A DNA stretch of 64,000 nt, from the sequence record MH383160.1. The stretch is one strand, 5' to 3'. The position numbers and the translations under genes are program-made. The notes beneath the pieces were generated by a model. The model ran no database searches, had not been told where the DNA came from, and worked only from the letters and a program-made list of their open reading frames with translations. Below are positions 9,735-38,802 of the stretch, in pieces; position 1 is the stretch's first letter, and every line of letters starts with the position of its first letter.

Positions 9735-12045
9735 TTGATTATCCTTAGTTACTAGGGGGAACCTCTCCCCCGTGCTATGTAAAATATTATACAGTACTAA
9801 AAACTAATTGCAAGTACTTTATGATTTTTTATAAAACATTTCGGCAGTGATATTTTTACCCGTTGGTTGTACTTTATCCAGAATTTTTTGATGCCCAGGC
9901 CGTCCAAATGAATATGATCCGTAAACCGTAAACCAGTAGTTACCCTCAGTGTTTACATGTACAGCACAATAGGGAACGCCCCGCGATTCATCACTAGTAA
10001 AGTGTGCTACCGTTCCCGTTACATTCGAAGTCGTTGATTTGATTTGTTCAAGCATTTTCTTATTCCTTAGTTACCAGGGGAACCGCTCCCCCTATGCAAA
10101 ACATTATACGCGTTTAAAAACTAATAGCAAGTATTTTAATAAAAAGTATTTGAAAAATAATTGTTGACAACTGCATCCAGTACTGGCATAATACTTATAT
10201 AAAGACGATACAGTCACTAACCCACAGGGTGCCGAGATCCGTCTATTAAATGATTCAGTACTGAAAAAGTAACGGGGAGTTATTATCTCCCCGCGTTGTT
10301 ATTTGGTAAGGTATAAACAGAAGTCACCTTTATTTGCTACGCCGCCAGTGTAACGCGATGAATAGTTAGAAATATCTTGTACTTCTGCTATTACCAGTGT
10401 ATCATCATTCATTTCGTCGCAGAAGCAAACGGCTGGATCTTTAACGCCGATATTGTCGGCATGTTCCCGCATAGATTTAACCAGTGCTTCCAGTTGAGAA
10501 AGAGTAGTGATATTAGCCATTGTATTTTCCTCATTACCAGGGAGAACCATTTCTCCCCTCTATGTAAAACATTATACAGTACTAAAAACTAATTGCAAGT
10601 ACTTTTTAATTAAATTCCATAAAATCATTCTCAACGTGCACAACAATCTGATTATTTTTAAAGTCCGCAGAAAACTCAATACAATCATATACTGCTTTTT
10701 CTGTTACCATACTATGAGTACCAATCGGATTAATAGGGGATTGAATTGTTTCAATCTCGTTACCTTGTTCATTAACAATTAAAATATTAAACATAACTTT
10801 TACTCCTGATAGTGTTTACCTGATATAAAGTATTATACGCCTTTATTGCTTAGTGTCCAGTACTTTTTAAAACATAATCAAAGACACTTCTCACATCATT
10901 GATCATCGCCTGGCGGTTAGCAGGTAAAGCATCAGGATCACCACTATCCCAAGCCTGTATGAAGCCTCCAAGCTCTGAATAAACTTTATTACGCAATCCG
11001 ATTAACTGTAATTCTTTTTCTTCAAGCTCTTTGATACGTTCAATTAAATCACTCATTAGATAATCCTTAGTACTTAACTGTAAGATCCGCAACGGTCGCA
11101 GTAGTGCCCGTCTTCCTCGTCATCGTCAACGAATTGCCCGACGAAATGATCTACTTTCGCTTTCAGGTTATTATAATCGTTTTCTACTTCCTTTAATCGT
11201 TCCTGGTAGTATTCCAGTGCCTCAAGATACGCCGCCTCAGCAGTTTTTGCACGCATAGCTAAATTCATGCCACGCGATTCATCATAAAGCCAATAACCAT
11301 CAGTGCACTGGCTAATAGATAATGACTTGCTTAATACTGTATAGCTAATTACTTTGCTCATTAGATATTCCTCAGTAAAGGCGGGAACCATTCCCCGCCA
11401 TTATCTCAGTACTAAATTAATATGCGATTGATTCTACTACGCCATCAATAACATTGAATTGATACTCGTTACCCTCGATCAGTGCCGTGATGTTCTCAGT
11501 AGTGAATTGATCCTCATATGCATTCTCTAAATCACGGTACAACTTGCGGGATAATTCACGAATAGTTTCAGTGAGTAGTTCCTCAAGCTCATTAACTAAC
11601 GTTTCTTGTTTTGCGGTTAAATCAGTGTAAGCCGATTCAATGTACCCGCTTACAGTATTCTCATGCGAGTAGTGGGAGTGAGAACGCTTTACACTCATCG
11701 GCAAATCATCTTCATTCAGCAGGTGACGGATTGAGCGATACTTAGTTAATGCTCTTACCTTGCGTAAAAACTTCACTGCGTCAACGTGGTCAGTACTGAT
11801 TGATGCACCGTCACCTTGCGACCAAAAACCACTGAATCGTAAATCTGCGTCATTAATGCCATATTCCGGTAGTACTGTTTCTTTATAGTATTCAATTTCA
11901 CTTTCAGAAAAATAATCATCGTTTAAGTTTTTTTCACGTTCCCGAACCAGTTCGATAGCTGACGTTTGTTGTTCTGCGTTCAATTCAGAAAAAGCCATAA
12001 CATAAGTAGTAGTAGTGATAGTTTTCATTTTGTAACCCTCATTCA

Positions 12046-12596: not shown

Positions 12597-14165
12597 GCTG
12601 TTATCCCATCGTTGATGTATGAATAAAATCCTATTATAAAGTACTATCACCGTGCAATAGTACTTTAAATAAATTCTATTACATTCCAACCATTGCAGCA
12701 CGGATCGCCGTAGTGCTATATTTGAATCCGTCCGGCGTTTTATCTTGTCCAGTCTGTTCTAAAAATAGCATCATATGACGGGCCGCATCATTGCGATTAG
12801 TGTTAGCGGCAATAAAGTCCTGGGCCAACCGGTATAATGATTCATCGTTATTAATCCAAAGGCTTACATTCCATTGAGTTTTGTTAGCGTGACCTAAGAA
12901 CATTTTTGATTTAGCCATTTTTAAATCCTCGTTTGATTTGAGGCGGGAATAGTTCCCGCTCTCGATGTAAAGTATTATACGCTATTTGTTAGTACTGTCA
13001 AACTACTTTTTAAAACTTATTCGTAAATCTTGCCACTGTCAGCCCATACCAGGAAACGAGGCATATTATCCCATGCATCTTGTTTTAAATTTAAACCGTG
13101 TAATACTTCTGTACTTTCCATTCCTGGTACTGGTTTACTATACACCGCGAACAATTCACCCATATACTGATAAGCCATCGTTAAATCACTTGCGATCATC
13201 TTATGGATCATCGCATCAAGCATCACGGTAGCGGCGTATTGTTCACGCTTAAGCGGTAACATTGCAATAAGTTCCCGATAAGCTGAAATGTGAATTTTTA
13301 CCGTTTCTGCCGGAAGATCTTTCATCTCGTCGCGGAAGTTAACCAGGTTAGCAATAATTTTATTGATTTGAGTAGCCATCGTTTTAATCTCTCTTAAAGT
13401 GTAGCGGGAAGTGTTCCCGCTCTCGATGTAAAACATTCTACACCTTTCCCAATACTTTGCAAGTACTTTCTACAAATACTTTTAAAATAGTTTTCTTTCT
13501 ATATAGGAGTACTATCATTCAGTACTGCTACACTAGAATCAATCAACCAAATCACTACTATACCCCATAAAACGGCCTCAGACGCATTCTAACGCATTAA
13601 TACACCTAAGCTATACATTTGCACCGCCACCAGCTAACCAGGGCTTTACGATGCGTTTAAACGCGTTAAATTATTTTCAATTATTTTGTTTTTTGCTATT
13701 GACTCAGTACTAAAAAAGCGTATAATTACTACATAGACGCGAGAAAGCGGATATCCCAAGGGGTGCGGAATTGTGCCCAAAATTCAAGATATAAAAAAAA
13801 GGATACACTCCCGCACCCTAGCAGGTCAAAGCACTTTCTCAGTACTGAATCATAGTACCATAGTACGCCCCAGGATGGCAAGCAAATTAATTAAAACTTT
13901 TTTCATCCAGGGTATTGCTTTATTTTTCCAGTACTGTATAATAGTTTCATCAAGTCGAGAAAGACTATAGCCCACCGGGTGCATAGTTACGCCCAAAATT
14001 TCAGTACTAGATTATTTTTTAAAAATATTCATCCAGGCGGTTGACATTGCCCCCAGTTTATTAGATAATGATTCCAGATTCAGAAAAATCTAACTCCAGA
14101 TACTGCGGGGAAACTATCCCCACGCGGTAGGGGAACTATTGGAAAAAAACAAAATAAAATTTTGA

Positions 14166-14295
14166 TTTAGCCGTCTATACTTCCAGACGTGTAACCATCT
14201 AGCCGTTTAGCCGTCCAAACGTCTAGCCATACAGCCATCCAGAAATCTAGCCGTTTAGCCGTCTAGATAGATAGCCATCTTTACTTCCAGACTTC
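14166..14295. repeat. Iteron-like array: 8 x AGCC(G/A)T, a 19-bp direct repeat and an 11-bp direct repeat
   Basis: AGCCRT at 14169, 14201, 14209, 14225, 14233, 14249, 14257, 14273; ATCTAGCCGTTTAGCCGTC at 14197 and 14245; TACTTCCAGAC at 14178 and 14282. Confidence 0.9.
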
Positions 14296-14389
14296 TGGAG
14301 GGCTAGACATATCTACGTCCAAAATCCATCCAGGGTAACTACGCCCAAAATCCGTCAGTACTATACCATAGATCTATCTTTTGAAAGGG

Positions 14390-14463
14390 AGTATTCAGTA
14401 CTGCCACAATAGCCCTCACTGTTACTGTAGGAGGATGAAGACTATCATGTAGTACTGAATACT
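14390..14463. repeat. Perfect 13-bp inverted repeat
   Basis: AGTATTCAGTACT (14390-14402) and AGTACTGAATACT (14451-14463). Confidence 0.85.
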
Positions 14464-15345
14464 GTTAGAGGGAACCCACCAGCTTGTGCTGGTGGCATAA
14501 TGCTTTAGATTAAAATCAGTACTAATACCATTCTGTTAATATCAGTACTGTTATTACGATTTTCATATGAGGTTCAAAAAGATGTACCACCACAGGAGGA
14601 ACTATCTTTTCTGTACTGTCTCACGACAGGAGGTAGAGTAAATGAATTGTTCGCAGCAACTCATCTCTCTATGTAGAACATTATACAGTACTGAATCATA
14701 ATGTCAATAGCTTTCTTTCATTATTCAGTACTGATATTCTTGAGAACTACCCGACTACAAACATCATTATATCCCACAAATCATAAACGTCCCAACGTAA
14801 ATTTCAACTTTCGAAGATCCAACTTTTATTTCATAGGTACTCCAAAATTTTTAGGATCGAGATTTAGGATGGAGTACTAACCAACTTTTTGCTGGAGCCT
14901 CAAGGGGTAATGGAATTTTACCCCGAAGGGTAAAGGGGTAATTGAAATTAAGGTGAAAGTAATAATTCAGTACTAATCATTGCGTGATTACTTTTGATTA
15001 CATTTGATGTAATTTGAAAAATGGAAAAGGAGCTTGGAAACTACAAAGTACGGCAGACTTCCTCTGCCTACTTAGTGGCATATTAGTACTGAATCATTCA
15101 CACACATTTCCGTGCATTCTTGAGCAATCTTGTCTATACTAATCAGTACTGAATCATATATAATCATTCTGTGATTCTACGGTGCTCATATAAATGTTTA
15201 TATATGATTACTTATGACTACCTATGATTACGGGGTTTAGCCTGGGGAGAATCCTAGTGATCGCATTTGTCCAGGCTGAATTTTAACAATTCGCCTGTAC
15301 ATAAAGGTTGTTCACTAGGAGCTTCCCCTGTCTACTTGTGTTTAA

Positions 15346-17468
15346 TTACTTCCTATATATAAGCATTAAGATATAGTAGTACTGATTGTACTGTACATTC
15401 TCTTTAATATTATAAGGGTCTATAGCAATCTCGGTACATCTGTTAAATGCATATCTATTAAATGCCAGTGGAATTATAGATCTAATCCATACTTGTTCAT
15501 TTTCTTTTAGTTTACTTATATAGAAGTTTTTATACTCTTTATGCATAGTATTATGTCTATTAATATGATAGTACTAGTGTTAGTACTGAGCACAATTTTT
15601 CTTTATAGTTCTTAGGGTATATAGAATCTTTTATGCACTCATTGAAGTGCCATAGGTATAATCTTGGGTCGCATTCTTTATATATTCTTACGGGGACGAA
15701 TGTTAGTTTTCTTATATAGAATTCTTTATGTTCTTTATTCATATTAGTACCTGAATATAAGTAGGATTATGTTATAGTACTGGTTAGTACTGCAATGATT
15801 CTCTATACATCGATTAACAGTTATGGAATAGCTATATCTGGCGTAAGCATTATCCAGCGGGATTTTACATTGAGCACTTAGAGAAAGTACAGTAGGTAGT
15901 GTATTCAAATAGAAGTCTTTGTAATTATTCATACAGGAATAGTATACCTATGATGCCGGAGTACAGGTTAGTACTGTTACCATCTTCATTTGCGTTTAAA
16001 GTCATTTGAATACAATTATTGTAGCATACTCTGCCGAAATATGTATTAGTACTTAAAGGTGGTGTAGTCCTTAGAAACATTTGTTCTGAGGGGCTTATGT
16101 ATTTGGAGTAGAATTCTTTATGTTCTTTATTCATATTAGTTAGTGTCTGTATATAAGTAATAGTAAGAATACGTACTGCACATCTTCATCTTTAGTATTG
16201 AGTACTGTACGTATTGCGTCATGGAACAAGAATATAGTACTTGGGTCATGAAAATTTAAAGGGGTTCTGGGTACGGCACATTTGTAGTTCCCTTTAACAA
16301 ATTGTGTGTAGTATTCTCTATGCATATTAGTACCTATATATTAGGGCGAGAATGTAGTACAATTCATATGGAATGTAATTTGGGGTGATCGCACACTGTG
16401 TATGGTAAATGAATTGTTCGGTATTTTTCTTATCCTTGATATCTATTGGGATTTGTGGTATAAGCATTTGGGAGTTTAGATCGAGATGGCTTAAGTAGAA
16501 TTCTTTATGCATATTGTTCTCTTAGAATACGAAAGCTAGGTACAGGGTATGATACAGTACTCGATGATAGCTGTCAAAATCTAGTATACATGCTTTAGTA
16601 CACATAGTAAAATACACTTTATCATTTTGTGCATTGATACCGCGAGGTTTATCTAATAGATTAGTTCTGAGGTACATTGGGAAATATTTTGTGTAGTATT
16701 CTTTATGCATGTTAGTACCTGAATATAAGTAGGATAGTGTTATATAGCTGGTCATAACTACTACTATTTTCTATACTTCGTTCTATGCAGTTATTGAATC
16801 CAAGTACTGCCAAATCGTTATCCAGAGGGACTTTATATCTGGCGTAGTGTTCAAAAATGCTGGGGAGAAATTGTTTGTAGTATTCTTTGTGCATATTGTT
16901 CTCTTTAGTACTTGAATATTAGGGCGAGGATGTAATACAGTTTATATGTTCTATCCTCGTACATTAGGGTGTACTTAGTACATTCTTGGAACATTGTTTT
17001 TGCGTCATCTTTTATGCCCAATGTAACGTTTGGTATAAGGCTTTGTAGATACATTGGGAGTTTCTCTATGTAGTATTCTTTATAGTTGTTCATATTATGT
17101 GTTATTTCGTGAAAACAAGGGTTAGTACTGCATAGTACAAGTCATACGTATCTTTAGGGTTAATAGCACCTTTAATACATTCTTTCATTAATTCATTATA
17201 GATAATTTTAGTACTGAAGGTATTGGATGTTACTATATCGGAATTAAGGTACGACAAGTAGAATTCTTTATGTTTGTGCATATTAGTACTTATATATTAG
17301 TAAAAGGATGTGATACAGTACTCGATTATAGTCTTCAATATATATCGAGGATTTAGTGCACTGAATGAAGTAGTCTTTTTCGTAGTTTTTTTCTATACCC
17401 AATGGTTCTGTTGGTAGAAGGTGTTGGAGATACATTGGGAGTTTCTCTATGTAGTATTCTTTATGCAT
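15346..17468 (-). other. Tandem array A1: 11 paralogous ~59-69 aa CDSs (15346-15546, 15560-15742, 15744-15932, 15925-16134, 16140-16325, 16327-16512, 16522-16710, 16712-16894, 16905-17093, 17102-17281, 17283-17468)
   Basis: Shared N-terminal M(H/N)xx(K)E(F/Y)Y and C-terminal Yx(I/V)LxL(I/V)(F/Y)xY; tight TAA-T-ATG coupling. 17102-17281 translated by hand. Confidence 0.85.
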
Positions 17469-18126
17469 AGTTTGTAATATACGTAATGAGGTGATGCATT
17501 TTCTTATTAGTACTGATAATTTCCTGTACATGTTTTGTCAGATTGTACGCGTTTTTATAGAGTACTGGATTATCGATTACAGTACTGTACATGAATAGTT
17601 CTTCTTCCTGTAGTTCTTTGTGTTCTAGTTCTTTGAGGAATTGCAGTACTGTATCAGTTTCGTCAGTAGGTTGTGCTTGCCAGAAGTGCATTTTCTCGTG
17701 TACTTTTTCTGATCCTACGTAGTATCCATCACCGATTTGGAATTGAGCACTACTGATATCATTTGGTGTATTACAATTCACGAATAGGTATACGTTTCCA
17801 TAAGAGATATTCAAAACACACGGGATACCATTTAACTGTATAGTTAAGCCGAAATATACGTTTTTTATATTTTTAGTACTAGTATTAGTACTCAATACTT
17901 TTAAATCAGTATTATAGATATTCGCATAATCAATAGAGATATTATTTTTCTTCAAGTACGATTTGAGGTTCTTAGATACGAGAACTGTACTGAATTTATC
18001 CTTTTTATTTCGTTTCTTTAGTACATTAGGGTGATAAGTATATGAAGATGTAACTGATTCTGCTTGAATACTGTTGAGGTACTTAAAGTGCTTAAGGTAT
18101 TGTTTACTGTGTGCATTAAGTTTCAT
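17461..18126 (-). CDS. Hypothetical protein (221 aa) interrupting the small-ORF array
   Basis: ORF with AAGGA RBS; unrelated to its neighbours. Confidence 0.75.
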   Translation of the reverse strand: MKLNAHSKQYLKHFKYLNSIQAESVTSSYTYHPNVLKKRNKKDKFSTVLVSKNLKSYLKKNNISIDYANIYNTDLKVLSTNTSTKNIKNVYFGLTIQLNGIPCVLNISYGNVYLFVNCNTPNDISSAQFQIGDGYYVGSEKVHEKMHFWQAQPTDETDTVLQFLKELEHKELQEEELFMYSTVIDNPVLYKNAYNLTKHVQEIISTNKKMHHLITYITNYA

Positions 18127-18136
18127 TTGGTTTCCT

Positions 18137-19746
18137 TTATATAGATGCCAGGGCGAGGATTTCCCTGTAGGGATTATCTTGTGTTAGTACAGAATAAATG
18201 CAGCTATTGAGATTAATATTTTTAGTACTTTTTGTTCCTAGTTTGTAGTAATCAACGAATGTGTCGTACATGAAACGGTCTTTTATGGTTATACGTTCTA
18301 TATAGAATTGTTGCATAGTATTCCTTATATAGAGATTAGTTTCATTACTTCTCTGTATGTGTACTTTTCGTTTTGTGCATCTCTTGTGACGACATATAGG
18401 AAGGTGTGTTTATCTTTTTTGTTCCCGCAATTGTAGAAAATATTGAACTTATTGAAGTTGAATCTTTCGGCGTGTTGTAGTTTAGTTAAATAGAATTCTA
18501 TGTTCATTTTATTCCTTACATTTCAATAAGTTTAAGTACTGCTCGGTACGTGTACTTAGTTGTCAGTGCTTCTTTAATAGAAACACAGAAGTAATGTTTT
18601 TTGTCTCTTATACTGCCGCGTTTGTAGTACCACACATGGGAGTTGTGACTGTACTTGTCTCTGTCGGATAGTTGTTGGTAGTAGTAGCTTATATGATTCA
18701 TTATAATGTAATTAGCCTTACTATATTAAAGTACTCGGTTCCTGGTGTACCTTGTAGTATATTACGCACGACATTTTTTTGGTGCTGGATGATTGCTGAA
18801 GGTGCGGTTCTTTTTAGTTTTTTTAAAGTACTGAATTCTTGTTTAAGTATGAACTGTACATCTTTAGGGAGAATATCTATGTAGTACTGATGAATGTTTG
18901 TAGTTTTCATATAGCACCTTTTAGAACTTAAAGATGAGGTTCAGGATAGAGCGGTACTTAGTTTCAGGGAACTGATGTTCTATTGCATAACGTGTCGCCA
19001 TCCTGAAATCGTAATTGTAATATAGATTATCCTTTCTCATAGGTGGTGCTAAAGAGAATGATAGCTGGTCTTGCTTGTGTAGTTTACTACCATAGAAATC
19101 TTTATGATTATTCATAGAAGTAGATTAGTCCTATTAAACCTGAGTACATAATATTTTTGTTATTGCATTCGATTGCTTCTAGAGTACTACGTATACAATT
19201 ATTAAAGCAATCTCTACCGAATTGAGTATTGGTACTTACAGGTGATACACTCCTTAGAAACAATTGTTCTTCGTTGCTAAGGTATTTGGTGTAGAATTCT
19301 TTATGTTCAGTATTCATATTAGTACTCGATTAATAGGGTAAGGATGTAATAGTATTGCATACATTCTACCCCTTGTAAAGCATTTCTTATGTTATTATTC
19401 CTGTACGAGTTCAGGAGTTTAGGGCTACGTTTGAGGTGTTTGAAATTAGTTTGTGTATGCAGTAGGCTTTCACGTAGACCTTTTGTTGGTAGTGCATCGA
19501 TGTAGTACTGTTCGATATTCATATAGATAGCAGTACTAAGATTTTTGATAATTGTTTATTGCTATCCCCGCAGATGTTGCTGTGTAAAATACTCACAATG
19601 AGGGTATCAATTGCATTGTTCATCATAAGGGTGCATCCTGGACTATTATAATTTTTTAGCTCAATTAGCCACGAACTATCCGAGAGAAATTCCCCGTACT
19701 CTAGTTCATTTAGAGTATTGAGGTAGTACTTAAGAGTATTTGTCAT
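18137..19746 (-). other. Tandem array A2: 8 related small CDSs (18137-18316, 18325-18507, 18516-18701, 18701-18910, 18921-19115, 19108-19317, 19319-19522, 19519-19746)
   Basis: Same N-terminal (F/Y)Y motif and hydrophobic C-terminal helix; 19108-19317 is a clear paralogue of 15925-16134. 18137-18316 translated by hand. Confidence 0.8.
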
Positions 19747-19771: not shown

Positions 19772-19800
19772 ATAGTACACCAGTACTGAAAGGATGTCAA
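19772..19800 (-). promoter_or_regulatory. sigma70 promoter for the small-ORF array, divergent from the plus-strand array
   Basis: TTGACA-17-TACTAT on the minus strand with AGTACT in the spacer. Confidence 0.7.
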
Positions 19801-19848
19801 GGGTTTTCTTTATGGGGTAAATATGATATAATGAATAAGGAGGGAAAT

Positions 19849-20985
19849 ATGTTACCTTTTGCAAGAATGATGAATTATGGGAACGTAGCACCAGATAAAC
19901 TAAAAATACGTGATATTGTTGCAGGTGCTAATTCATTATTACTAATAACAGAGGATAATGAATTATGGGTGCGTGGTAATAATGCGTATGGCAAATTAGG
20001 TATAGGAACTGATACTATAGTGAATGTAACCGAGTGGACTAAAGTTAGAGATGATGTTAAGTTTGCTTGTGCTAGTAATTTAGTATGCGTTGTATTAACT
20101 GTAGATAATAAAATTTTATACTGTGGTGATGAATGGTTTGAATCTGGTGGTTCGACAAGTTCTAAAGTTGTTACATGGAAAGATGTTACGACACAATTTA
20201 GTGCAGTGAATCTAAGCACAGTTCGTGAAATGAAAATAACTTATTATTGTGTAGGATTACTTACAAATGATAATAGATTATATGCTAAAGGATATGATAA
20301 TAACCAATCATTTGGTGGTTCAACAAGCAAAGTTAATGCTGTATTAGTTGCGTCAAATGTTTCAAAATTCTACACTTCTCTATCTGGTACTATATATTCT
20401 AGTACTACTGGTGGTTACTATCGCTGTGGTATAAGCAATACTGGAGCATTGGGTACTAGCACAAATTTAACTTCTTATAATTTGTACTCTGCTCCCGAAT
20501 TTGCATCCGAATGTGCAGTTGGTATGTCAACATTAAACTCTGGTATATTATATTATGATACTAATGGTATCACTAGATATGTTATAGCAGGTCAAAATAG
20601 AAATTATCAACTAGGTAATTCTTCTTCAAATACCACAAACGTATATTCGTATACAGAATTAACCGGATATAGAGGCAGGTTTAGGGATTTGTGGAGTGAT
20701 ATGAATAACTCTGTTCTTTCTTTTGCTATAAGCACAGATGGCAATACTTTATATTATGCTGGTACTAACAATACACTATCTTCTGGTGATCCTGGTGTTG
20801 AATATTCATCTGCATTCAAAGAAGTACCACACGGGTTTAATGATATAACAAAGGCGGCATCGTTAGCATATCTATCTATAGTGCAAGATTCAACGGGATG
20901 GTATTATTCTGGAAATGCAACTACGTTATATGGTTTGCCATCGAGTGGTGAATTTATACCATTACCATTACCAACATTAATTTAA
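19849..20985 (+). CDS. Array gene 1: RCC1/BLIP-II-like beta-propeller with MLPFARMMNYGN tag
   Basis: GxNxxGxLG repeats (RGNNAYGKLGIG, GQNRNYQLGN); start trimmed to MLPF after the GGAGG RBS. Confidence 0.85.
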   Translation: MLPFARMMNYGNVAPDKLKIRDIVAGANSLLLITEDNELWVRGNNAYGKLGIGTDTIVNVTEWTKVRDDVKFACASNLVCVVLTVDNKILYCGDEWFESGGSTSSKVVTWKDVTTQFSAVNLSTVREMKITYYCVGLLTNDNRLYAKGYDNNQSFGGSTSKVNAVLVASNVSKFYTSLSGTIYSSTTGGYYRCGISNTGALGTSTNLTSYNLYSAPEFASECAVGMSTLNSGILYYDTNGITRYVIAGQNRNYQLGNSSSNTTNVYSYTELTGYRGRFRDLWSDMNNSVLSFAISTDGNTLYYAGTNNTLSSGDPGVEYSSAFKEVPHGFNDITKAASLAYLSIVQDSTGWYYSGNATTLYGLPSSGEFIPLPLPTLI

Positions 20986-21057
20986 ATATAGGCCAGTACT
21001 TGATACTGGCTTTCTTTTTTTTGTATTAAATATAGTATAATGAATAAGGAGGGATTT

Positions 21058-22167
21058 ATGTTACCTTTTGGAAGAATGGTTAAGTACGGAAATATTGTAC
21101 CTGGTCCTAAAAATATAATTAAAGTTGGTGCTTCTACACAAGGTCAATTCTTATTGACTGATTCACATGATTTATATTACATAGGTAGAAATCAAGGTGG
21201 TGAATCTGGAAATGGTAATACCAACACGGTATCTTCATGGATATTAGTAAGTGCAGATGTTTCTAATTTTTTCGTGGGTGATCGTACACTTGTTATTATT
21301 AAAAATGATAATACTATATGGACATCAGGTCAAACGTACTGGTTCTCATCTTCTACAACTACTTCTTACAGTACTGTATTAGTTGAAAGGACTAGTTGGT
21401 TTACCACGGCTATACCAGTAAGTGAGATTGCTAATATTGTATGTACAAATGGTTTAATATTTGTACTTAGCACTAATTCAGTACTCTATGGTGCAGGAGA
21501 TAATGGATATCGTGGTTCTTTGGGTATTGGTTCATCATCAATTTATACATTAACTCAATGTGCTACGAACGTTCGTAAAGTAATGACAAATGCGAATGAT
21601 AGTATGTATCTTACATTAGATAATAAGCTATATAGTTCTGGATGGAATAGTAGTGGGCAGCATGGTACGGGGAACCAAACACAAATTAATACTTGGGGAT
21701 TACGTAGTTCTGGTGTAATCGATGCAGCAATTGGTGGTAATGCATTAAATTACTATAATGGTACATCATATTTCGTATGTGGTCAAACTCCAAACTTTCT
21801 TAGTTCAGGTACGACTACATTCCGTGCAGTTCCTGTAAGTACTTTGCCTAATAGTTCTCCGTTGTTTATGACGAATTCACCTGCATTAAATACTGCTACA
21901 CAAATGGTAATTACTAGTACATATCAGAAGGGTGTTGGGGCGAACCGTGGTTTGGGATTAAACAATTCTCAAACTGGTGCTATATATAGTGCTACCAATT
22001 TACAATTACCCGTTGAAGTTAGTGAGATTAGGGATGTTCTTTTTAGTGATGGTTTGACATCGATATTAACCAAAAATGGAGATGTGTATAGTACTGGATC
22101 GTATTACGCCATTCCAGGTGCAATCGAGGATGTTGCAGTCTTTACTAAAATTGATTTACCAAAATAA
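21058..22167 (+). CDS. Array gene 2: RCC1-like propeller with MLPFGRMVKYGN tag
   Basis: GRNQGGESGNG and GWNSSGQHGTG repeats. Confidence 0.85.
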   Translation: MLPFGRMVKYGNIVPGPKNIIKVGASTQGQFLLTDSHDLYYIGRNQGGESGNGNTNTVSSWILVSADVSNFFVGDRTLVIIKNDNTIWTSGQTYWFSSSTTTSYSTVLVERTSWFTTAIPVSEIANIVCTNGLIFVLSTNSVLYGAGDNGYRGSLGIGSSSIYTLTQCATNVRKVMTNANDSMYLTLDNKLYSSGWNSSGQHGTGNQTQINTWGLRSSGVIDAAIGGNALNYYNGTSYFVCGQTPNFLSSGTTTFRAVPVSTLPNSSPLFMTNSPALNTATQMVITSTYQKGVGANRGLGLNNSQTGAIYSATNLQLPVEVSEIRDVLFSDGLTSILTKNGDVYSTGSYYAIPGAIEDVAVFTKIDLPK

Positions 22168-22237
22168 CATAATGCCAGTACTTGATACTGGCTTTTATTT
22201 TTTGATTAAATATAGTATAATGAATAAAGGAGGAATT

Positions 22238-23425
22238 ATGTTACCTTTTGCAAGAATGGTTAAGTACGGGAATAAAGTCATTCCATATGTTCCCAATTTT
22301 ACTAAATTAGTCACCCCAGCAGTTGGTTATTCATTTACATGCACAATGCTGCTGGATGTAAATGGATCAGTGTGGGCTATGGGTCTTCAGAATGGTGGAA
22401 TTTTTGGGTTAGGGAATACTACACAGGTTACTGAATGGACAAAAATATATAGCAATGTTAAAGATTTTTGGTGCAGTACAGGGAATGGGTTTTGTCTAAT
22501 ACGAACAAATGATGATAGATTCTTTTATAGTGGTTTAGATAAATGGCTAGGTAATAATACAACAAATACTGTAACAACATTCACTGAATGTACGAGTTAT
22601 TTTACACAATTTGGTATTTCAAAAATCAAAGAGATATATGTAGGTCTTGATTATGCTTTGATTTTAGGTACTGATAATAGTTTATATTTGTTAGGTGATA
22701 ATAAAAATTCAAAGTTTGGTTTAAACACTGCATCATATTTTAATAAATTTACATTTTTAGTCGATAATGTTAAAAAATTCTGTTCATCCATCACACCCTC
22801 TAACTGGATTATTAAACTAGATAATACAATATGGCGTACTGGGACAACATCTCATGGAACGTTGGGAAATGGAGTTCAAAACACATATATATTTCCTTGG
22901 GTTCAATATAAGGGCACACCTGTTACCGAAGCTATAGACGTTTTTTGTAGTGCGAGTTATATTGGTATTATAACTAAAGGTACACCAGAATCATGTCCTA
23001 TGTATACAATGGGCTATCAAGCTGATGGTCAGTTGGGTAATAATACTACAGCAGGGGGTTATAAATTAACGCCAACGTTATCGAAAACCGTTCCAGATGA
23101 TAGTGAATTCATTCGAATTGAAAACATCTCATCCCGTGGCCTGGTATATTATAGCTCTGGTAAAATTTATAGTACTGGTTATAATAACAATGGTCAATTG
23201 GCAAATAACAGTACAATTAATTCTGGTTCATTTGTTGAAGCAATTTTACCTGATGGTGTTAATTTTAAGAAAAGTGAATCACTTGTAGCTGGGAACGATG
23301 CAACGTTGTATATGTACATTAATAATAAATTATACTACGCGGGGAAATCCCCTGATAATATTTCAGCAAGTAGTTCATCTGTCATGAAAGAGTTCCCACT
23401 TCCAACAATCAATGCCAGTACTTGA
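22238..23425 (+). CDS. Array gene 3: RCC1-like propeller
   Basis: GYQADGQLGN and GYNNNGQLAN repeats; the stop codon lies inside the next cassette hairpin. Confidence 0.85.
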   Translation: MLPFARMVKYGNKVIPYVPNFTKLVTPAVGYSFTCTMLLDVNGSVWAMGLQNGGIFGLGNTTQVTEWTKIYSNVKDFWCSTGNGFCLIRTNDDRFFYSGLDKWLGNNTTNTVTTFTECTSYFTQFGISKIKEIYVGLDYALILGTDNSLYLLGDNKNSKFGLNTASYFNKFTFLVDNVKKFCSSITPSNWIIKLDNTIWRTGTTSHGTLGNGVQNTYIFPWVQYKGTPVTEAIDVFCSASYIGIITKGTPESCPMYTMGYQADGQLGNNTTAGGYKLTPTLSKTVPDDSEFIRIENISSRGLVYYSSGKIYSTGYNNNGQLANNSTINSGSFVEAILPDGVNFKKSESLVAGNDATLYMYINNKLYYAGKSPDNISASSSSVMKEFPLPTINAST

Positions 23426-23477
23426 TACTGGTATTCTTATTTGTATTAAATATAGTATAATGAATAAAGGAGGAATT

Positions 23478-24665
23478 ATGTTACCTTTTGCAAGAATGAT
23501 GAATTATGGGAATATTGTGCCTGTACCACTACAAATTAAGAAAATAATACCAACTGATACTGATGTTGTTGTACTTTATACTGATGGTCAACTATACGCA
23601 CGAGGAAATAATGCTTTTGGGAAGTTTGGAAGAGGCAACAACACTGCATTAAGAACATGGACATTAATTAGAGAAAACGTTAACGATTTCTGGATCACAC
23701 AAGGAACTTTGTTAGTTCAAGATAATGACTTAAATTATTACTATTGTGGATATGGTGATCATATTGGTTTACCAAGTAGTACTACTACGTTTTTAAGTTA
23801 TAACCAATATATTGAAAATTTGTTCACGCAAAGTTCAAGTACTTCAATTAAACAGATGTATGCAGGTACTACGTGGTTTACTTTCTTAATGGATAATAAT
23901 ACAATATGGAGTACTGGTTGGAGTGGGGGTAAACAATTCGCTGATGGTACGGGTAGTACTCAACAAATAACAGATGGATCATTTGTAAAAGCTGTCACGC
24001 CTGATGTTGATATTGCACAAATACAGTCAACAAATAACTGTGTAATGTTTTTTGATACACAAAATAATTTATATATTGGTGGTGGTACGTCAGGTATAAG
24101 TACTAGTACTACATGGACTTCATATAATGAATATACTTTATATAAACCAAGTACAACATACACAAAAACGTTACAATACACTGGATGCTCAAGTGGTGCA
24201 GTCAGTGCTTTGGTTGAGAATCCAAGTACTGGTGCACGTCAGTTTCTAGTTGGTGGTTTAGCGAATAATGGTGCATGGGGCAACAATACCACAACCAGTT
24301 CAGCACTTGCTGTATTAGGGAGCAATAGTACGACATTACCACCCGGTACTTTGTATTCAATTCATACTGGATACCCAACACAATCTAGTATACTAGTTAC
24401 GAGTACTGGTGTATATGCAACTGGTTTAAATGCGAGTAGTTATGCTGGCTCTTTGGGTGTAGGTTCTAATGTTACTATTGGTAAATTTACTGCATGTCCA
24501 ATGCCTACACAAATAACATATTCTATGTATGATAAAATAAAAATATATAGAGGTTCATATCGTACATTTCTAACTGATATGAAAAATATATATTCAACCG
24601 GAACTTATGATGATGGTGGTCCTAGTACAACTAGATATGTACTAGATACACCCCGTCAATTATAA
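23478..24665 (+). CDS. Array gene 4: RCC1-like propeller
   Basis: RGNNAFGKFGRG repeat; MLPFARMMNYGN tag. Confidence 0.85.
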   Translation: MLPFARMMNYGNIVPVPLQIKKIIPTDTDVVVLYTDGQLYARGNNAFGKFGRGNNTALRTWTLIRENVNDFWITQGTLLVQDNDLNYYYCGYGDHIGLPSSTTTFLSYNQYIENLFTQSSSTSIKQMYAGTTWFTFLMDNNTIWSTGWSGGKQFADGTGSTQQITDGSFVKAVTPDVDIAQIQSTNNCVMFFDTQNNLYIGGGTSGISTSTTWTSYNEYTLYKPSTTYTKTLQYTGCSSGAVSALVENPSTGARQFLVGGLANNGAWGNNTTTSSALAVLGSNSTTLPPGTLYSIHTGYPTQSSILVTSTGVYATGLNASSYAGSLGVGSNVTIGKFTACPMPTQITYSMYDKIKIYRGSYRTFLTDMKNIYSTGTYDDGGPSTTRYVLDTPRQL

Positions 24666-24736
24666 TATAATAGCCAGTACTCAGTACTGGCTTTCTTATT
24701 TGTATTAAATATAGTATAATGAATAAAGGAGGAAGT

Positions 24737-25474
24737 ATGTTACCTTTTGGAAGAATGGTAAAGTACGGGAATAAAATTGAATATAAGCCAGATGGTGAAC
24801 AATTAATCACGACAATAGGAACAACACAATTTACAGTTCCTGCTGGCGTTACCGAAATATCAGTATGTGTTATTTCGCCGGGTGGTCAACGTGGTGCTGG
24901 TGGCGGCTTATCGTGGCGTAATAATATTCCGGTTACTAGTGGTGAGTACTTAAGTGTTTCTCTTACACATCCCAACACTACTACACCAGTTGAAAACGGT
25001 TTATATCGTGGAACTGAAAAACTATGTGTTAGCTTCACTGGTGAATATAGGGTTGGTGGACTAGGTGGGAAAGCTGCTAACGCTATTAATGATGGTGGTG
25101 GTAATGGGGGCAACGCTGGTGTAAGTGGTGGTGCAGTCATTGGTGGTGGTGCTGGTGGCTACACTGGTAAAGGTGGTAACGGAGATGCAATCACTGGTGA
25201 AAATGGTGCTGGCGGCGGCGGTGGTGGTGGTGCATTCTATAATACCTCGTTCATTGGTACGGGTGGTGGTACTGGTATCATTGTTCAAGGTGCTAATGGT
25301 ATTGGCGGTAGATACGATGGTTCATATAATGGTGGTGCTGGTAGTGGTGGTGCTGGTAAGATGTATGGTGGTGGTGGTAGTATATGGGATAATTTTTCTT
25401 ATACGGCTGCTGGTGGTGGTGCTGTGCGAATAATATGGGGACGTGGGAGATATTATCCTAACAATTCAGTCTAA
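24737..25474 (+). CDS. Array gene 5: glycine-rich (polyglycine, adhesin-like) protein with the same MLPFGRMVKYGN tag
   Basis: Many GGxGG/GGGGGG runs, ending GGGAVRIIWGRGRYYP; no RCC1 repeats. Confidence 0.8.
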   Translation: MLPFGRMVKYGNKIEYKPDGEQLITTIGTTQFTVPAGVTEISVCVISPGGQRGAGGGLSWRNNIPVTSGEYLSVSLTHPNTTTPVENGLYRGTEKLCVSFTGEYRVGGLGGKAANAINDGGGNGGNAGVSGGAVIGGGAGGYTGKGGNGDAITGENGAGGGGGGGAFYNTSFIGTGGGTGIIVQGANGIGGRYDGSYNGGAGSGGAGKMYGGGGSIWDNFSYTAAGGGAVRIIWGRGRYYPNNSV

Positions 25475-25546
25475 AATATAGGCCAGTACTTGATACTGGC
25501 TTTCTTATTTGTATTAAATATAGTATAATGAATAAGGAGGGGAATT

Positions 25547-26689
25547 ATGTTACCTTTTGCAAGAATGGTTAAGTACGGGAATATAGCACCAGTTCCAGTA
25601 GTTCCTACAATAAAAGATTTTAAGATTGGCTTTTCACATGAAGTGTTATTGGACAGTGCAGGTGATGCATGGGGTATTGGATACAATACAGATGGGCAGT
25701 TAGGCTTTTTGGATGCAAATACCAATTCACTAGGTGTGTGGTCTAAGATATATACTGATGTTCGATTAATTGGAGTTACTGCTAGATATACAGTGGTAGT
25801 TACTAATAATAATAGAATCCTTTACGCAGGAAATAACTTAATTTCTAGTACTACTACTCTTGGGTGGACCGATATAACTGCCAGTATGGGTCCGGTTGCG
25901 GTGGATAGCATCGATGCATTATATTGCACAGATGGTATGATGCATATTAAAACTTCAGATGGTTCTTTATATGCATATGGTCGTAACATGAACGCAAACA
26001 GTGGTGTTACTGGTGGTGTTATTAGTGTTGCAACTAAGGTTAATTTGCCTTCTGCTGTAAATGACATGCGATATACGTTTAGTTATGGTTCAGTACTATG
26101 TCGATTGGATACGACTTCTATATACGCATGGGGACGAAACACAAATGGTGAATTAGGCCAGGGTAATACAACAGCTATCGTTACCCCAAAACTATTGTCT
26201 GGTGCTTCTATTGCAATGGGTACTTCGTATAATGCTACTGCAATTGTTTCTGGTTCTGCATCGTTAGTTACGTGTGGTGGTCAGAACAGTGGTCAGTTGG
26301 GTAATGGTATTACTACTGATGGTAATGTTTACGTATATGCTGCTAGAACATACCCAGGCGATCTTAATACTATAAGAAGTCCAGTGGATTGTAGTACAAC
26401 GTACACCTCTGCATTTATGAGTCCAGATGGTATATATTACACTGGTGCTAACCGAAGCATGTTTGGTGGTATTAGTGGTGCTGCTACCGTTGGTGTATAT
26501 ACTAAATGTAGTGATTTACCAATAACATATTCTAATATAATTCAGTGGGGTAGTGGTACTATTGGTGGTGCTATATGTAGTAGTACAGAGTTATACCAAT
26601 GTGGCATCGGTCGATACATTGCTGGCGATGGTGCGAGCACAACCAGGTATGGATTTAGGAAGACACCATTACCTTGGGATGTTTATTGA
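25547..26689 (+). CDS. Array gene 6: RCC1-like propeller
   Basis: GYNTDGQLG, GRNTNGELGQG and GQNSGQLGNG repeats. Confidence 0.9.
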   Translation: MLPFARMVKYGNIAPVPVVPTIKDFKIGFSHEVLLDSAGDAWGIGYNTDGQLGFLDANTNSLGVWSKIYTDVRLIGVTARYTVVVTNNNRILYAGNNLISSTTTLGWTDITASMGPVAVDSIDALYCTDGMMHIKTSDGSLYAYGRNMNANSGVTGGVISVATKVNLPSAVNDMRYTFSYGSVLCRLDTTSIYAWGRNTNGELGQGNTTAIVTPKLLSGASIAMGTSYNATAIVSGSASLVTCGGQNSGQLGNGITTDGNVYVYAARTYPGDLNTIRSPVDCSTTYTSAFMSPDGIYYTGANRSMFGGISGAATVGVYTKCSDLPITYSNIIQWGSGTIGGAICSSTELYQCGIGRYIAGDGASTTRYGFRKTPLPWDVY

Positions 26690-26760
26690 AATTATGCCAG
26701 TACTTTGTACTGGCTTTTCTTTTTGTATTAAATATAGTATAATGAATAAAGGAGGGAAGT

Positions 26761-27936
26761 ATGTTACCTTTTGCAAGAATGGTTAAGTACGGGAATAGAG
26801 TTCCAGCACCTTCAGGTGTTATGAAGATAAGTACATCTCATGTACATATGGGTATGTTATTCGATACAGGCAATTTATATCTACGTGGATTAGGTACACA
26901 GTACAGGTTAGGAAATGATAGTACTGCGACACTACAAAATGGGTGGGTCAAGTGTCCATATAAAGTTTCTGATGTTTGGTGCTTCTTCGCAGCGACAATT
27001 ATACTTACGACTGATGGAGAATTTTACTTAGCTGGTCAAATGGGTTATGTCGGTGTCTCTGCATCACCAGTTCCTGGATGGACTAATATCACATCTTTAT
27101 TGTCTACAATACCAGCACTTACTACAGTGGTAGATATAGCTTCTACTGAAACTACCGAATCAAATGGTTCGTTATTGATTTTGTTAAGTAATGGGGACTT
27201 ATATGGTATTGGGCGTAATACAGGAGGTGTATTGGGTGTTACTGGTATACAAACAACGCCGATTCAGATTGCTACTGGAGTTAGTATGATTGCGGGAACA
27301 CCGTCAGGTGAGGCTTTCCATTATGTCAAAAATAATCAATACTACAGATGTGGGAATAACGCAAGTTACAACTTAGGGTCAAGTTCTTCTAAACTTTCTA
27401 CATTTACGGTAAGTACTGATATATCGGGAACAGTTATTGGTATTTCATGTACTACATTAACGACTTCAGTACTTACATCTAATAATGGTAATATTAGAGT
27501 ATATAATGCTGGCAGAAACACTGATTATTGTTTAGGAATAGGGTATGGAGACACTAAGACTATAATGAGTCCATTTAGTATGACTCCAGCAATTGTTGGT
27601 ATCACACCAGATGCTAATTCAATGAATAACCACTGTTTGAATTATTCTTTAATGGCAATGACACAGAATGGTAAGCTTTATACATGTGGTAGTGGTGTTG
27701 CTCTTGGTTGGCCTGTTTCTATTGAATCAGAAAGATCTTATTATCACCAGGTACAATATGAGGATATGGATATTGCACCAGATGTTAATGCATTTTCAGC
27801 ACAAGGGGGTTCCGGTGTGTTATACGCATTAGTGGGGACAAATGAGGTGTACTGGTGTGGTAGTGGTTCTATGTTCCAGGAACAGAGTGCAGGTACACGA
27901 CAAGTTAAAATGAAGAAAATGATTTTACCGGAATAG
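26761..27936 (+). CDS. Array gene 7: RCC1-like propeller
   Basis: N-terminal blade closely similar to gene 10 (HMGMLFDTGNLYLRG vs HVGLLYSTGNMYMRG). Confidence 0.85.
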   Translation: MLPFARMVKYGNRVPAPSGVMKISTSHVHMGMLFDTGNLYLRGLGTQYRLGNDSTATLQNGWVKCPYKVSDVWCFFAATIILTTDGEFYLAGQMGYVGVSASPVPGWTNITSLLSTIPALTTVVDIASTETTESNGSLLILLSNGDLYGIGRNTGGVLGVTGIQTTPIQIATGVSMIAGTPSGEAFHYVKNNQYYRCGNNASYNLGSSSSKLSTFTVSTDISGTVIGISCTTLTTSVLTSNNGNIRVYNAGRNTDYCLGIGYGDTKTIMSPFSMTPAIVGITPDANSMNNHCLNYSLMAMTQNGKLYTCGSGVALGWPVSIESERSYYHQVQYEDMDIAPDVNAFSAQGGSGVLYALVGTNEVYWCGSGSMFQEQSAGTRQVKMKKMILPE

Positions 27937-27945
27937 GAGGAAAAT

Positions 27946-29133: not shown

Positions 29134-29214
29134 AGTATGTATATCAAACAGCCAGTACTTGATACTGGCTTTTCTTTTTGATTAAATATAGTATAATGAA
29201 TAAAGGAGGGATTT

Positions 29215-30394: not shown

Positions 30395-30404
30395 GGAGAA
30401 AATT

Positions 30405-31574: not shown

Positions 31575-31645
31575 ATTTTATGCCAGTACTTAACACTGGC
31601 TTTTCTTTTTGATTAAATATAGTATAATGAATAAAGGAGGATTTT

Positions 31646-38782: not shown

Positions 38783-38802
38783 TTTAATTAACCTCTTTTA
38801 TT

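What the first reader, a model, noticed from the sequence alone, without database searches (positions are those of the whole stretch)
15346..19746. Tandem library of about 19 mini-proteins with fixed ends and a hypervariable middle
Seen: 59-75 aa ORFs with a conserved N-terminal HKE(F/Y)Y-like motif, often a central Cys, a C-terminal YxILxLI(F/Y)xY helix and divergent interiors; translationally coupled from one sigma70 promoter. Evidence of repeated duplication (15925/19108, 18701/19319, 16905/17283). Inference: a gene-accordion family using one small scaffold to address many targets, such as anti-defence inhibitors or decoys. I cannot name a known family for it.
Basis: partly seen in the sequence, partly recalled or inferred. 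Interest (0 to 1): 0.7.

Follow-up and report, generated by a model that had tools for sequence, protein, structure and literature searches.

The report
Jumbo-phage operon of diversified mini-proteins
A giant E. coli phage carries one tightly packed operon of 19 tiny (about 60-residue) genes, 18 of them old, diverged copies of one small helical protein found only in this phage genus; their function is unknown, and the best guess is a set of early infection proteins that each bind a different host target.

Summary
Window 15346-19746 (minus strand) of Escherichia phage UB, a 353-kb Asteriusvirus, holds 19 ORFs of 59-75 aa. They are spaced -8 to +13 nt apart and interrupted by one unrelated 221-aa gene. 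Thirteen form a solid family (PHROG 11711, function unknown). Two smaller subfamilies (2 and 3 genes) join it at profile level (90-93% probability). The first gene, m01, cannot be shown to belong.

AlphaFold gives confident small helical folds (pLDDT 91 and 88) with no PDB match. The conserved ends and central F..C..I columns follow buried-face helix periodicity; the variable residues lie in the loop and on the other helix faces.

The family occurs only in Asteriusvirus-like phages and only in this array. Copy number is 15-22 across 13 complete arrays, with gene order conserved.

The paralogs are old (closest pair 57-59% identical), so this is a birth-and-death family, not a recent gene accordion. 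Orthologs are under purifying but relaxed selection (dN/dS 0.36-0.47), with no clear positive selection.

A sigma70-type promoter and Shine-Dalgarno site upstream are nearly invariant in nine phages, which suggests early expression. No member appears in the published phAPEC6 virion proteome.

Function is untested. An early repertoire of host-target or counter-defence binders is the most likely reading (about 0.4).

The parts
19772..19800 (-). Sigma70-type promoter of the array: TTGACA, 17-nt spacer containing CAGTACTG, then TACTAT. An AGGAG Shine-Dalgarno follows, 8 nt before the m01 ATG.
   Evidence: The -35 hexamer and Shine-Dalgarno are invariant in 9 phages, and the -10 has a single change in JNE01.
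19519..19746 (-). m01, 75 aa, first gene of the operon (group D). Similar size and end motifs, but homology to the family is unproven.
   Evidence: Its orthogroup is in 11 of 14 phages, and JNE01 and Turkey5 carry a diverged D-type gene at the same position.
19319..19522 (-). m02, 67 aa, subfamily B
19108..19317 (-). m03, 69 aa, subfamily A. Closest paralog is m16 (59%).
18921..19115 (-). m04, 64 aa, subfamily A
18701..18910 (-). m05, 69 aa, subfamily B (paralog of m02, 39%). Present in only 6 of 14 phages.
18516..18701 (-). m06, 61 aa, subfamily C
18325..18507 (-). m07, 60 aa, subfamily C (AlphaFold model, pLDDT 88)
18137..18316 (-). m08, 59 aa, subfamily C
17461..18126 (-). Unrelated 221-aa gene embedded in the array (phrog_29152, unknown function). 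It occupies the same position in every phage examined and is lineage-restricted.
17283..17468 (-). m09, 61 aa, subfamily A (AlphaFold model, pLDDT 90.8). The mechanical ORF extends to 17531, but the family start is the MHKEYY Met.
17102..17281 (-). m10, 59 aa, subfamily A
16905..17093 (-). m11, 62 aa, subfamily A (paralog of m09, 57%)
16712..16894 (-). m12, 60 aa, subfamily A
16522..16710 (-). m13, 62 aa, subfamily A. The mechanical ORF extends to 16755.
16327..16512 (-). m14, 61 aa, subfamily A
16140..16325 (-). m15, 61 aa, subfamily A. The only orthogroup found in all 14 phages.
15925..16134 (-). m16, 69 aa, subfamily A (paralog of m03)
15744..15932 (-). m17, 62 aa, subfamily A. Present in 5 of 14 phages.
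15560..15742 (-). m18, 60 aa, subfamily A
15346..15546 (-). m19, 66 aa, subfamily A, last gene of the array
15238..15334 (-). Long stable RNA hairpin just after the m19 stop codon (-39.7 kcal/mol, z = -4.0). No U-tract follows. It may mark the 3' end of the operon or stabilise the transcript.
   Evidence: (I4)

Best explanation
The locus is a single conserved operon of an Asteriusvirus jumbo phage. It encodes a genus-restricted superfamily of soluble helical mini-domains of about 60 residues.

Shown:
- 18 of the 19 genes are homologous.
- Two subfamilies give confident, similar four-element helical models.
- The conserved N-terminal motif, the central F..C..I stripe and the C-terminal helix follow buried-face periodicity. 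Paralog-specific residues lie in the loop or second helix and at the other helix positions.
- The paralogs are old. Each is kept as its own orthogroup in fixed order under purifying selection, with gene gain and loss giving 15-22 copies.
- The family exists nowhere else in the genome or outside this phage lineage.

Inferred:
- The invariant TTGACA-17-TACTAT promoter is read by unmodified host RNA polymerase, so the operon is expressed early.
- Genes that lack a Shine-Dalgarno sequence are translated by coupling to the gene upstream.
- The proteins act inside the infected cell as small binders. Each paralog uses its own variable surface on the common scaffold to bind a different host or rival-element protein. 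That makes the array a host-takeover or counter-defence repertoire whose content shifts with the hosts each phage meets.
For: - Homology: phmmer and HMM E-values of 1e-21 to 1e-29 within subfamily A; hhalign A-B 90%, A-C 93% over 52-57 columns; controls 3% or less.
- Fold: AlphaFold2 pLDDT 90.8 / pTM 0.74 (A) and 88.0 / 0.67 (C), with the same order of helices.
- Conserved columns 4-8, 12, 25, 37, 40-41, 45, 54, 57-58, 60-62 and 64 show i/i+3/i+4/i+7 spacing within the helices.
- Real genes: pooled ortholog dN/dS 0.36-0.47. Core columns 0.21-0.27 against variable columns 0.46-0.70, so each paralog keeps its own surface.
- Birth and death: 38 orthogroups in 14 phages, 15-22 genes in the 13 complete arrays, order conserved.
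- Restriction: only 36 phage records, 72 database proteins, and 29 clusters among 1.84 billion representatives, all in the same synteny. Only this array in the UB genome.
- Early-type control: promoter and Shine-Dalgarno nearly invariant in 9 phages, including JNE01, whose proteins are only 27-58% identical. No TATAAATA late motif in the array.
- Context: the window also holds a gp0.7-like kinase and many short genes of unknown function. In the related phage CBB, RpoD-like promoters mark a region of short genes that its authors suspect are early host-takeover genes (PMC5259590).
- Soluble: no TM segment; pI 4.7-10.
- Not seen among the 62 virion proteins of phAPEC6 (PMC7247149).
Against: - No expression, interaction or phenotype data exist for any member.
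- No clear diversifying selection, which an arms race would predict. Variable columns still give dN/dS below 1, and only one column reaches about 1. The test pools paralogs and is crude.
- Sigma70-like hexamer matches in the region are no more frequent than in shuffled sequence, so the promoter rests on conservation, not on the scan.
- The neighbouring genes evolve just as fast (dN/dS 0.23-0.73), so rapid evolution is a property of the whole genome arm, not of this family.
- Foldseek has little power for 60-residue helical proteins, so 'no known fold' is weak.
- I could not superpose the two models or inspect coordinates. 'Core' versus 'surface' is inferred from helix periodicity only.
Confidence: 0.42

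Rival explanations
1. Partners of the neighbouring RCC1-like beta-propeller paralogs. The mini-proteins would act as cognate chaperones, adaptors or inhibitors for the roughly 12 RCC1-like proteins encoded divergently next door, and the two arrays expanded together.
For: The two arrays share one short intergenic region of about 85 bp that is highly conserved and carries divergent promoters, in every phage examined. Both are lineage-specific expansions that vary between phages.
Against: Copy numbers do not match (12 against 19 in UB). Two RCC1-like proteins are virion-associated in phAPEC6, but no mini-protein was detected there. My attempt to test copy-number co-variation failed for technical reasons.
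Confidence: 0.15
2. Packaged internal or virion proteins. The conserved N-terminal motif would be a targeting or processing signal, as in the internal proteins of T4-type phages, and the proteins would enter the host with the DNA.
For: The conserved polar N-terminal motif (H, K, E at 67-84%) is unusual for a purely structural core. The family is a variable set of small proteins. Tiny proteins are easily missed by mass spectrometry.
Against: None of the 62 virion proteins reported for phAPEC6 maps to the array, although a 4.7-kDa protein was detected. The N-terminal residues are modelled with confidence as a helix within the fold (pLDDT 87 for the first ten residues). The C-terminus is equally conserved, which a leader model does not explain. 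The promoter is sigma70-type, not late-type. No sequence or fold match to any virion protein.
Confidence: 0.1
3. Small nucleic-acid-binding regulators. Each would be a transcription or translation factor with its own specificity, as proposed for the roughly 35-copy zinc-ribbon expansion of Bacillus phage G.
For: Small helical proteins, about half of them basic (pI 9-10 in 8 of 19). There is precedent for such expansions in jumbo phages (PMC7824862). A palindromic motif (TCAGTACTGA) is over-represented about 20-fold in the window and could be an operator.
Against: No helix-turn-helix, zinc-ribbon or other DNA-binding family is detected by Pfam, NCBIfam, PDB profile search or Foldseek. Charge ranges from acidic to basic (pI 4.7-10), so there is no uniform nucleic-acid-binding surface.
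Confidence: 0.1
4. A recent gene accordion: transient tandem amplification of one gene for dosage, followed by divergence.
For: Copy number differs between phages (15-22). A few closer pairs exist (m03/m16 and m09/m11 at 57-59%).
Against: There are no near-identical copies. Paralog protein identity is mostly 27-47%. Orthogroups and their order are conserved across the genus. TRF finds no DNA-level tandem repeat.
Confidence: 0.04
5. Not functional proteins: chance ORFs or decaying remnants in a fast-evolving region.
For: The UB GenBank record annotates none of them. The region is AT-rich and evolves quickly.
Against: dN/dS is well below 1 in five independent phage comparisons. All 19 frames are intact in UB, and most orthogroups recur with open frames across the phages examined. 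AlphaFold models built from natural alignments are confident. The promoter and Shine-Dalgarno are conserved.
Confidence: 0.02

Closest known systems
PHROG 11711 (phage orthologous group, function unknown)
   Same: 13 of the 19 genes match it at E down to 5.5e-27. It is the same family as subfamily A.
   Different: The PHROG carries no annotation. It does not capture subfamilies B and C or m01, and nothing is recorded about the tandem architecture.
Lineage-specific expansions of small proteins in jumbo phages, such as the roughly 35-copy zinc-ribbon family of Bacillus phage G (PMC7824862)
   Same: Dozens of small paralogs confined to one phage lineage, with function only guessed.
   Different: No zinc ribbon and no detectable homology. 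This family is helical with a single, partly conserved Cys. All copies sit in one operon behind one conserved promoter.
Early 'hyperplastic' regions of T4-type phages and the presumed early region of phage CBB (PMC5259590)
   Same: Clusters of short genes of unknown function behind host-type (RpoD-like) promoters, variable between related phages, and thought to serve host takeover (the T4 literature is cited from my own knowledge).
   Different: Those regions are mostly mixtures of unrelated ORFans. Here 18 consecutive genes are one diverged superfamily on one scaffold.
Gene accordions (poxvirus K3L amplification; segmental amplification in phage T4 under defence pressure), cited from my own knowledge
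   Same: Tandem copies of a small viral gene, with copy number differing between isolates.
   Different: Accordions are recent, near-identical and unstable. These paralogs are 27-59% identical and positionally conserved across a genus.
Multigene families in variable genome regions of large eukaryotic DNA viruses, cited from my own knowledge and named only as a concept
   Same: Old, diverged tandem paralogs with birth-and-death turnover in an accessory genome arm.
   Different: No homology. Different hosts and biology. Those proteins are several times larger.
Second mini-protein array in the same phage ('LGTNYQE' family, UB record 187.5-193.4 kb)
   Same: About 27 back-to-back genes of 65-90 aa on the same strand, about 20 kb away, with the same architecture.
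   Different: No detectable sequence relationship (hhalign 3% or less). Its conserved motif is central, not terminal.

Membership tests
PHROG 11711 | Significant match to the family HMM | tested here: met
   13 of 19 members match, best E 5.5e-27. The other 6 (B, C, D) do not match directly.
   A-B 90% and A-C 93% by hhalign, over 52-57 columns. m01 (D) scores 0.7% against the merged profile and 33% against B. So 18 members are supported and 1 is not.
   The A and C models are both confident and share the order of helices: H3-7/H12-15/H28-43/H47-60 against H3-8/H12-27/H30-45/H47-59. No tool was available to superpose them. B and D were not modelled.
Gene accordion | Recent, near-identical tandem copies | tested here: not met
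   The closest paralogs are 57-59% identical at the protein level. TRF detects no DNA repeat with the gene period.
Gene accordion | Copy number varies among close relatives | tested here: met
   15-22 copies in the 13 complete arrays, but through gain and loss of diverged orthogroups.
T4-type internal (packaged) proteins | Presence in the virion | tested here: not met
   No array product is among the 62 virion proteins of phAPEC6 (PMC7247149). This is literature evidence from a relative, not from UB itself.
T4-type internal (packaged) proteins | N-terminal targeting peptide removed by the prohead protease | not testable with these tools
   No N-terminal proteomic data exist. The motif is modelled as part of the fold.
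Known anti-defence proteins (anti-CRISPR, anti-restriction and similar) | Homology to a characterised inhibitor, or demonstrated inhibition | not testable with these tools
   No anti-defence library was available. Pfam, NCBIfam, PHROG annotation, PDB sequence and fold searches gave no named hit.
Defence-system components (PADLOC) | Match to a defence-protein model | tested here: not met
   Only two single-member hits, at E 0.005 and 0.014, with no family-wide match.
RiPP precursor peptide arrays | Adjacent modifying enzymes, and an unstructured variable core behind a conserved leader | tested here: not met
   No enzyme gene lies in or beside the array. The proteins are predicted to be folded and are conserved at both ends.
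Membrane mini-proteins | A hydrophobic segment long enough to span a membrane | tested here: not met
   The maximum 19-residue Kyte-Doolittle mean is 1.18 or less. The C-terminal hydrophobic helix is only about 10-14 residues long.

The most novel reading that the evidence does not exclude
Asteriusvirus phages keep genome-encoded libraries of binders. One 60-residue helical scaffold, diversified into 15-22 stable paralogs, would provide a panel of inhibitors, each neutralising a different host defence or takeover target in the first minutes of infection. Library content would track host range. At least one further, unrelated mini-protein library (about 27 genes) lies nearby in the same genome. 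This would be a germline-repertoire style of counter-defence, distinct from single anti-defence genes and from mutagenic diversity-generating retroelements.
Probability: 0.25. Interest if true: 0.8.

Novelty: new variant of a known kind. Interest (0 to 1): 0.55.

Why it matters
Most genes of jumbo phages have no known function, and short early genes are where many host-takeover and counter-defence factors have been found.

This locus supplies 18 natural variants of one small, confidently modelled scaffold, plus dozens of orthologs. That makes it an unusually tractable set for asking what determines target specificity in small phage proteins.

If the paralogs bind different host factors, the array, together with the second array nearby, would show that phages can build stable, inherited repertoires of binders. 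It would also give a new compact protein scaffold.

If the proteins instead serve the neighbouring RCC1-like proteins or the virion, that would shed light on the unexplained RCC1-like expansion of this phage group.

The finding also exposes an annotation gap: the UB GenBank record omits all 19 genes.

Tried and rejected
- Pfam, NCBIfam, PADLOC, PDB sequence-profile search and Foldseek against PDB gave no credible named hit. Foldseek against BFVD returned only the family's own members.
- Plasmids and complete E. coli genomes gave no match.
- Decayed family members in the 1.9-kb ORF-poor stretch downstream: none found.
- tRNA and Rfam scans of the window: nothing.
- Copy-number co-variation with the RCC1-like array: tblastn place counts were unusable because those paralogs are too divergent.
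- A conserved-gene baseline for divergence: the stretch I chose (36-41 kb) is itself mosaic, so it gives only a rough comparison (array 2-5 points more diverged).
- Literature: no paper in the library describes this family, and no transcriptome of an Asteriusvirus was found.
- The embedded 221-aa gene has no domain, no PDB relative, and only lineage-restricted homologs.
- Rejected: gene accordion, RiPP precursors, membrane peptides, spurious ORFs (see membership tests and rivals).

I stopped and used it in no tool call, query or comparison. It plays no part in the evidence.
Full report
**Identity of the window**
- The window is 100% identical to Escherichia phage UB (MH383160.1), a 353-kb jumbo myovirus of genus Asteriusvirus, species PBECO4. 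Window base 1 is record base 198,148.
- The UB record annotates only the 221-aa gene in this stretch and none of the mini-ORFs. Relatives such as E9.1, 121Q, WPEC5 and A4 annotate them all as hypothetical proteins.

**The observation**
- On the minus strand from 19746 to 15346 there are 19 ORFs of 59-75 aa. I numbered them m01 to m19 in the direction of transcription.
- Neighbouring genes are spaced from an 8-nt overlap to a 13-nt gap.
- One unrelated 221-aa gene (17461-18126) lies between m08 and m09.
- Two mechanical ORFs (m09, m13) extend upstream of the family start. The conserved MHKEYY methionine is the likely start.
- About half the genes have a recognisable AAGGA/AGGAG/AAGAG element upstream. 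The others overlap the preceding stop or follow it by one base, which fits translational coupling (inference).

**Is it one family?**
- All-against-all phmmer links 13 genes (m03, m04, m09-m19; subfamily A) at E down to 4e-29. It also gives a pair (m02, m05; B), a trio (m06-m08; C) and a singleton (m01; D).
- An HMM of A scores its members at E 1e-21 to 1e-26. The best of 2,080 shuffled ORFs scores 0.03.
- I enlarged the alignments with ORFs from 13 related phages. Profile-profile comparison then gives A-B 90% (E 1.4e-6, 57 columns) and A-C 93% (E 2.7e-7, 52 columns). Both run end to end and align the N-terminal aromatic-Tyr...Leu and the C-terminal Y..IL.LI.
- The A-C link was reproduced with database homologs (92.5%).
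- Negative controls scored 3% or less. These were the 221-aa protein and an unrelated mini-protein family from the same genome.
- m01 is not supported: 0.7% against the merged profile, and 33% (E 4e-4) against B.
- So 18 genes are one superfamily, and m01 is a positional look-alike of uncertain origin.

**Fold**
- AlphaFold2 on a 70-sequence alignment of A, with m09 as target, gives mean pLDDT 90.8 and pTM 0.74. The helices are at 3-7, 12-15, 28-43 and 47-60, with a Pro-rich loop at 16-27.
- A 22-sequence alignment of C, with m07 as target, gives pLDDT 88 and pTM 0.67. The helices are at 3-8, 12-27, 30-45 and 47-59.
- The order of elements is the same. The second element is a short helix plus loop in A and a full helix in C.
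- Column statistics over 124 distinct A sequences show low entropy at columns 4-8 (H, K, E, aromatic, invariant Y), 12 (L), 17, 25 (P), 37 (F), 40-41 (C at 65%, then T/I), 45, 54, 57-58, 60-62 and 64.
- Within helices 3 and 4 these columns follow i/i+3/i+4/i+7 spacing, which is one face of each helix. Columns 13-24, 27-36, 38-39, 42-44 and 46-53 are highly variable.
- 'Fixed ends, hypervariable middle' is therefore best read as a conserved core with paralog-specific loop and exposed faces. I could not inspect coordinates, so this rests on periodicity.
- Foldseek finds nothing in the PDB (best E 4.8) and only family members in BFVD. The power of this search is low for such small helical proteins.

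**Known families**
- PHROG 11711 (unknown function) matches the 13 A members.
- Pfam, NCBIfam, PADLOC and a PDB profile search give nothing credible.

**Distribution**
- tblastn finds the family in 36 phage records, all Asteriusvirus-like phages of Escherichia or Salmonella.
- A profile search of 5.8 billion proteins gives 72 hits.
- An exhaustive HMMER search of 1.84 billion representatives gives 29 clusters, all 57-69 aa.
- The contigs I looked up have the same synteny, with an RCC1-like array diverging from the mini-array.
- There is no match in plasmids or in complete E. coli genomes.
- I scanned the rest of the UB genome in separate pieces with the four HMMs. No member lies outside this array.

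**Evolution**
- In 14 phages the layout is always D-B-A..-(B)-C(n)-[221-aa gene]-A(n). The 13 complete arrays hold 15-22 mini-genes; the ph0011 record starts inside the array.
- Reciprocal-best-hit clustering gives 38 orthogroups. Most UB genes have positional orthologs in 9-14 phages. m05, m10 and m17 are patchy (5-6 phages). JNE01 and Turkey5 carry many private orthogroups. An m03-type gene sits at a different place in five phages.
- The closest paralogs within UB are 57-59% identical (m03/m16, m09/m11); most are 27-47%. TRF sees no DNA-level repeat with the gene period.
- This is an old birth-and-death family, not a recent accordion.
- Pooled ortholog dN/dS is 0.36-0.47 in five phage comparisons. 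That matches the embedded 221-aa gene (0.23-0.50) and the adjacent RCC1-like gene (0.54-0.73).
- Core columns give 0.21-0.27 and variable columns 0.46-0.70. The column classes were defined on an alignment that includes orthologs, so the two measures are not fully independent.
- On 115 roughly independent comparisons only one column reaches pN/pS of about 1.
- The genes are therefore real and constrained. Each paralog conserves its own variable surface. No blanket signal of diversifying selection was found.

**Control region**
- Upstream of m01 the sequence reads TTGACA, a 17-nt spacer containing CAGTACTG, TACTAT, then AGGAG 8 nt before the ATG.
- This intergenic region is almost invariant in nine phages. 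That includes JNE01, whose reciprocal-best orthologs are only 27-58% identical to UB's.
- The other strand of the same region carries a TATAAT and a Shine-Dalgarno for the first RCC1-like gene.
- The generic promoter scan is not enriched over shuffles, so conservation is the evidence.
- A related form, TTGACA-N7/8-CAGTACTG-TATAAT, recurs at three other sites in the window.
- No T4-type late motif lies in the array.
- In the related phage CBB, RpoD-like promoters cluster in a region of short hypothetical genes that its authors suspect are early host-takeover genes (PMC5259590).
- No Asteriusvirus transcriptome was found in the library.
- A stable hairpin without a U-tract follows m19.

**Other properties**
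- The proteins have no membrane-spanning segment. Their pI ranges from 4.7 to 10, and they are Tyr-rich at 10.6%.
- In the phAPEC6 virion proteome (62 proteins) the only products from this neighbourhood are two RCC1-like proteins, gp549 and gp551. The m09 ortholog gp542c and the m08-type gp545c are not listed.

**Interpretation**
- The descriptive core is well supported: one early-type operon, a genus-restricted helical mini-domain superfamily, old paralogs with conserved individual identities, and gain-and-loss turnover.
- The function is inferred. Small, soluble, early-type, non-virion, lineage-specific proteins with paralog-specific surfaces are most simply a repertoire of intracellular binders for host or rival-element targets (host takeover or counter-defence). 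I give this about 0.4.
- Rivals are partners of the adjacent RCC1-like paralogs (0.15), packaged proteins with an N-terminal signal (0.1), nucleic-acid-binding regulators (0.1), a recent accordion (0.04) and non-genes (0.02).

**Context noticed**
- The same genome holds a second, unrelated tandem array of about 27 mini-proteins with an LGTNYQE-like motif, about 20 kb away. It also holds the 12-member RCC1-like array. This lineage therefore builds tandem paralog libraries repeatedly.

- I stopped there, and it entered no tool call or comparison.

Noticed in passing
UB record MH383160.1 about 187,477-193,412 (locus L021 about 38,378-44,313), outside the window: A second tandem library: about 27 back-to-back minus-strand ORFs of 65-90 aa sharing a central LGTNYQE-like motif. 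It is unrelated to the family studied (hhalign 3% or less).
   Followed up: partly
window 13436-15346: About 1.9 kb with no ORF of 55 aa or more on the array strand, downstream of the array, and left largely unannotated in several relatives. It holds at least 11 copies of the palindromic motif TCAGTACTGA (49 in the window against 2.3 expected) and an 8-nt periodic tandem repeat at 14168-14266. It has no decayed family members and no Rfam or tRNA hit. It could be a regulatory, origin or non-coding RNA region.
   Followed up: partly
window 14678-14707(-), 59326-59355(-), 10569-10598(-), 19772-19800(-): A recurrent promoter form, TTGACA-N7/8-(T)CAGTACTG-TATAAT(GT), in which the palindrome supplies an extended -10 TG. 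It is probably a phage-specific class of strong host-type promoters.
   Followed up: partly
window 19831-34075 (+): An array of about 12 paralogous RCC1-like / WD40_RLD beta-propeller genes (phrog_4219), transcribed divergently from the mini-array. Individual paralogs are present or absent between close relatives: the best slurp01 match to the gene at 26761-27936 is only 34% identical. Two homologs are virion proteins in phAPEC6.
   Followed up: partly
window 15238-15334 (-): A long, very stable RNA hairpin (-39.7 kcal/mol, z = -4.0) directly after the last mini-gene, with no U-tract.
   Followed up: partly
window 17461-18126 (-): The embedded 221-aa gene of UB is far more diverged from its relatives (dN 0.12 against slurp01; 75-80% aa identity to the closest database proteins) than most flanking mini-genes (15 of 19 are 97-100% identical to slurp01). 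This suggests an exchanged allele, that is, mosaic recombination inside the array.
   Followed up: no
loci L005, L006, L009, L010, L011 (WPEC5, CMSTMSU, TH47, BF17, ph0011): The m03-type gene lies between the m13 and m14 orthologs in these phages instead of near the start of the array. This indicates movement or gene conversion within the array.
   Followed up: no
window 15346-19746 / GenBank MH383160.1: The UB GenBank record annotates none of the 19 mini-genes, although relatives do. This is an annotation gap.
   Followed up: yes
window 12679-12918 (-), and loci L015 and L017: Small DUF7249 proteins (79 aa) occur at least twice in the arm downstream of the array in relatives, so they are another small paralog family in this region.
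   Followed up: no
window 45803-46477 (-), 41314-41829 (-), 61737-62702 (-): A T7 gp0.7-like protein kinase (a host-transcription shut-off family), endonuclease V and a sigma-factor-like protein lie in the same window. They fit an early or middle functional arm.
   Followed up: no
proteins P0025, P0115, P0117, P0129, P0130: Several family or neighbour proteins are labelled 'Escherichia coli' in public databases but sit on contigs of 125-383 kb, most of them about 350 kb. These are probably phage genomes co-assembled with bacterial isolates. No RefSeq complete E. coli genome contains the array.
   Followed up: partly
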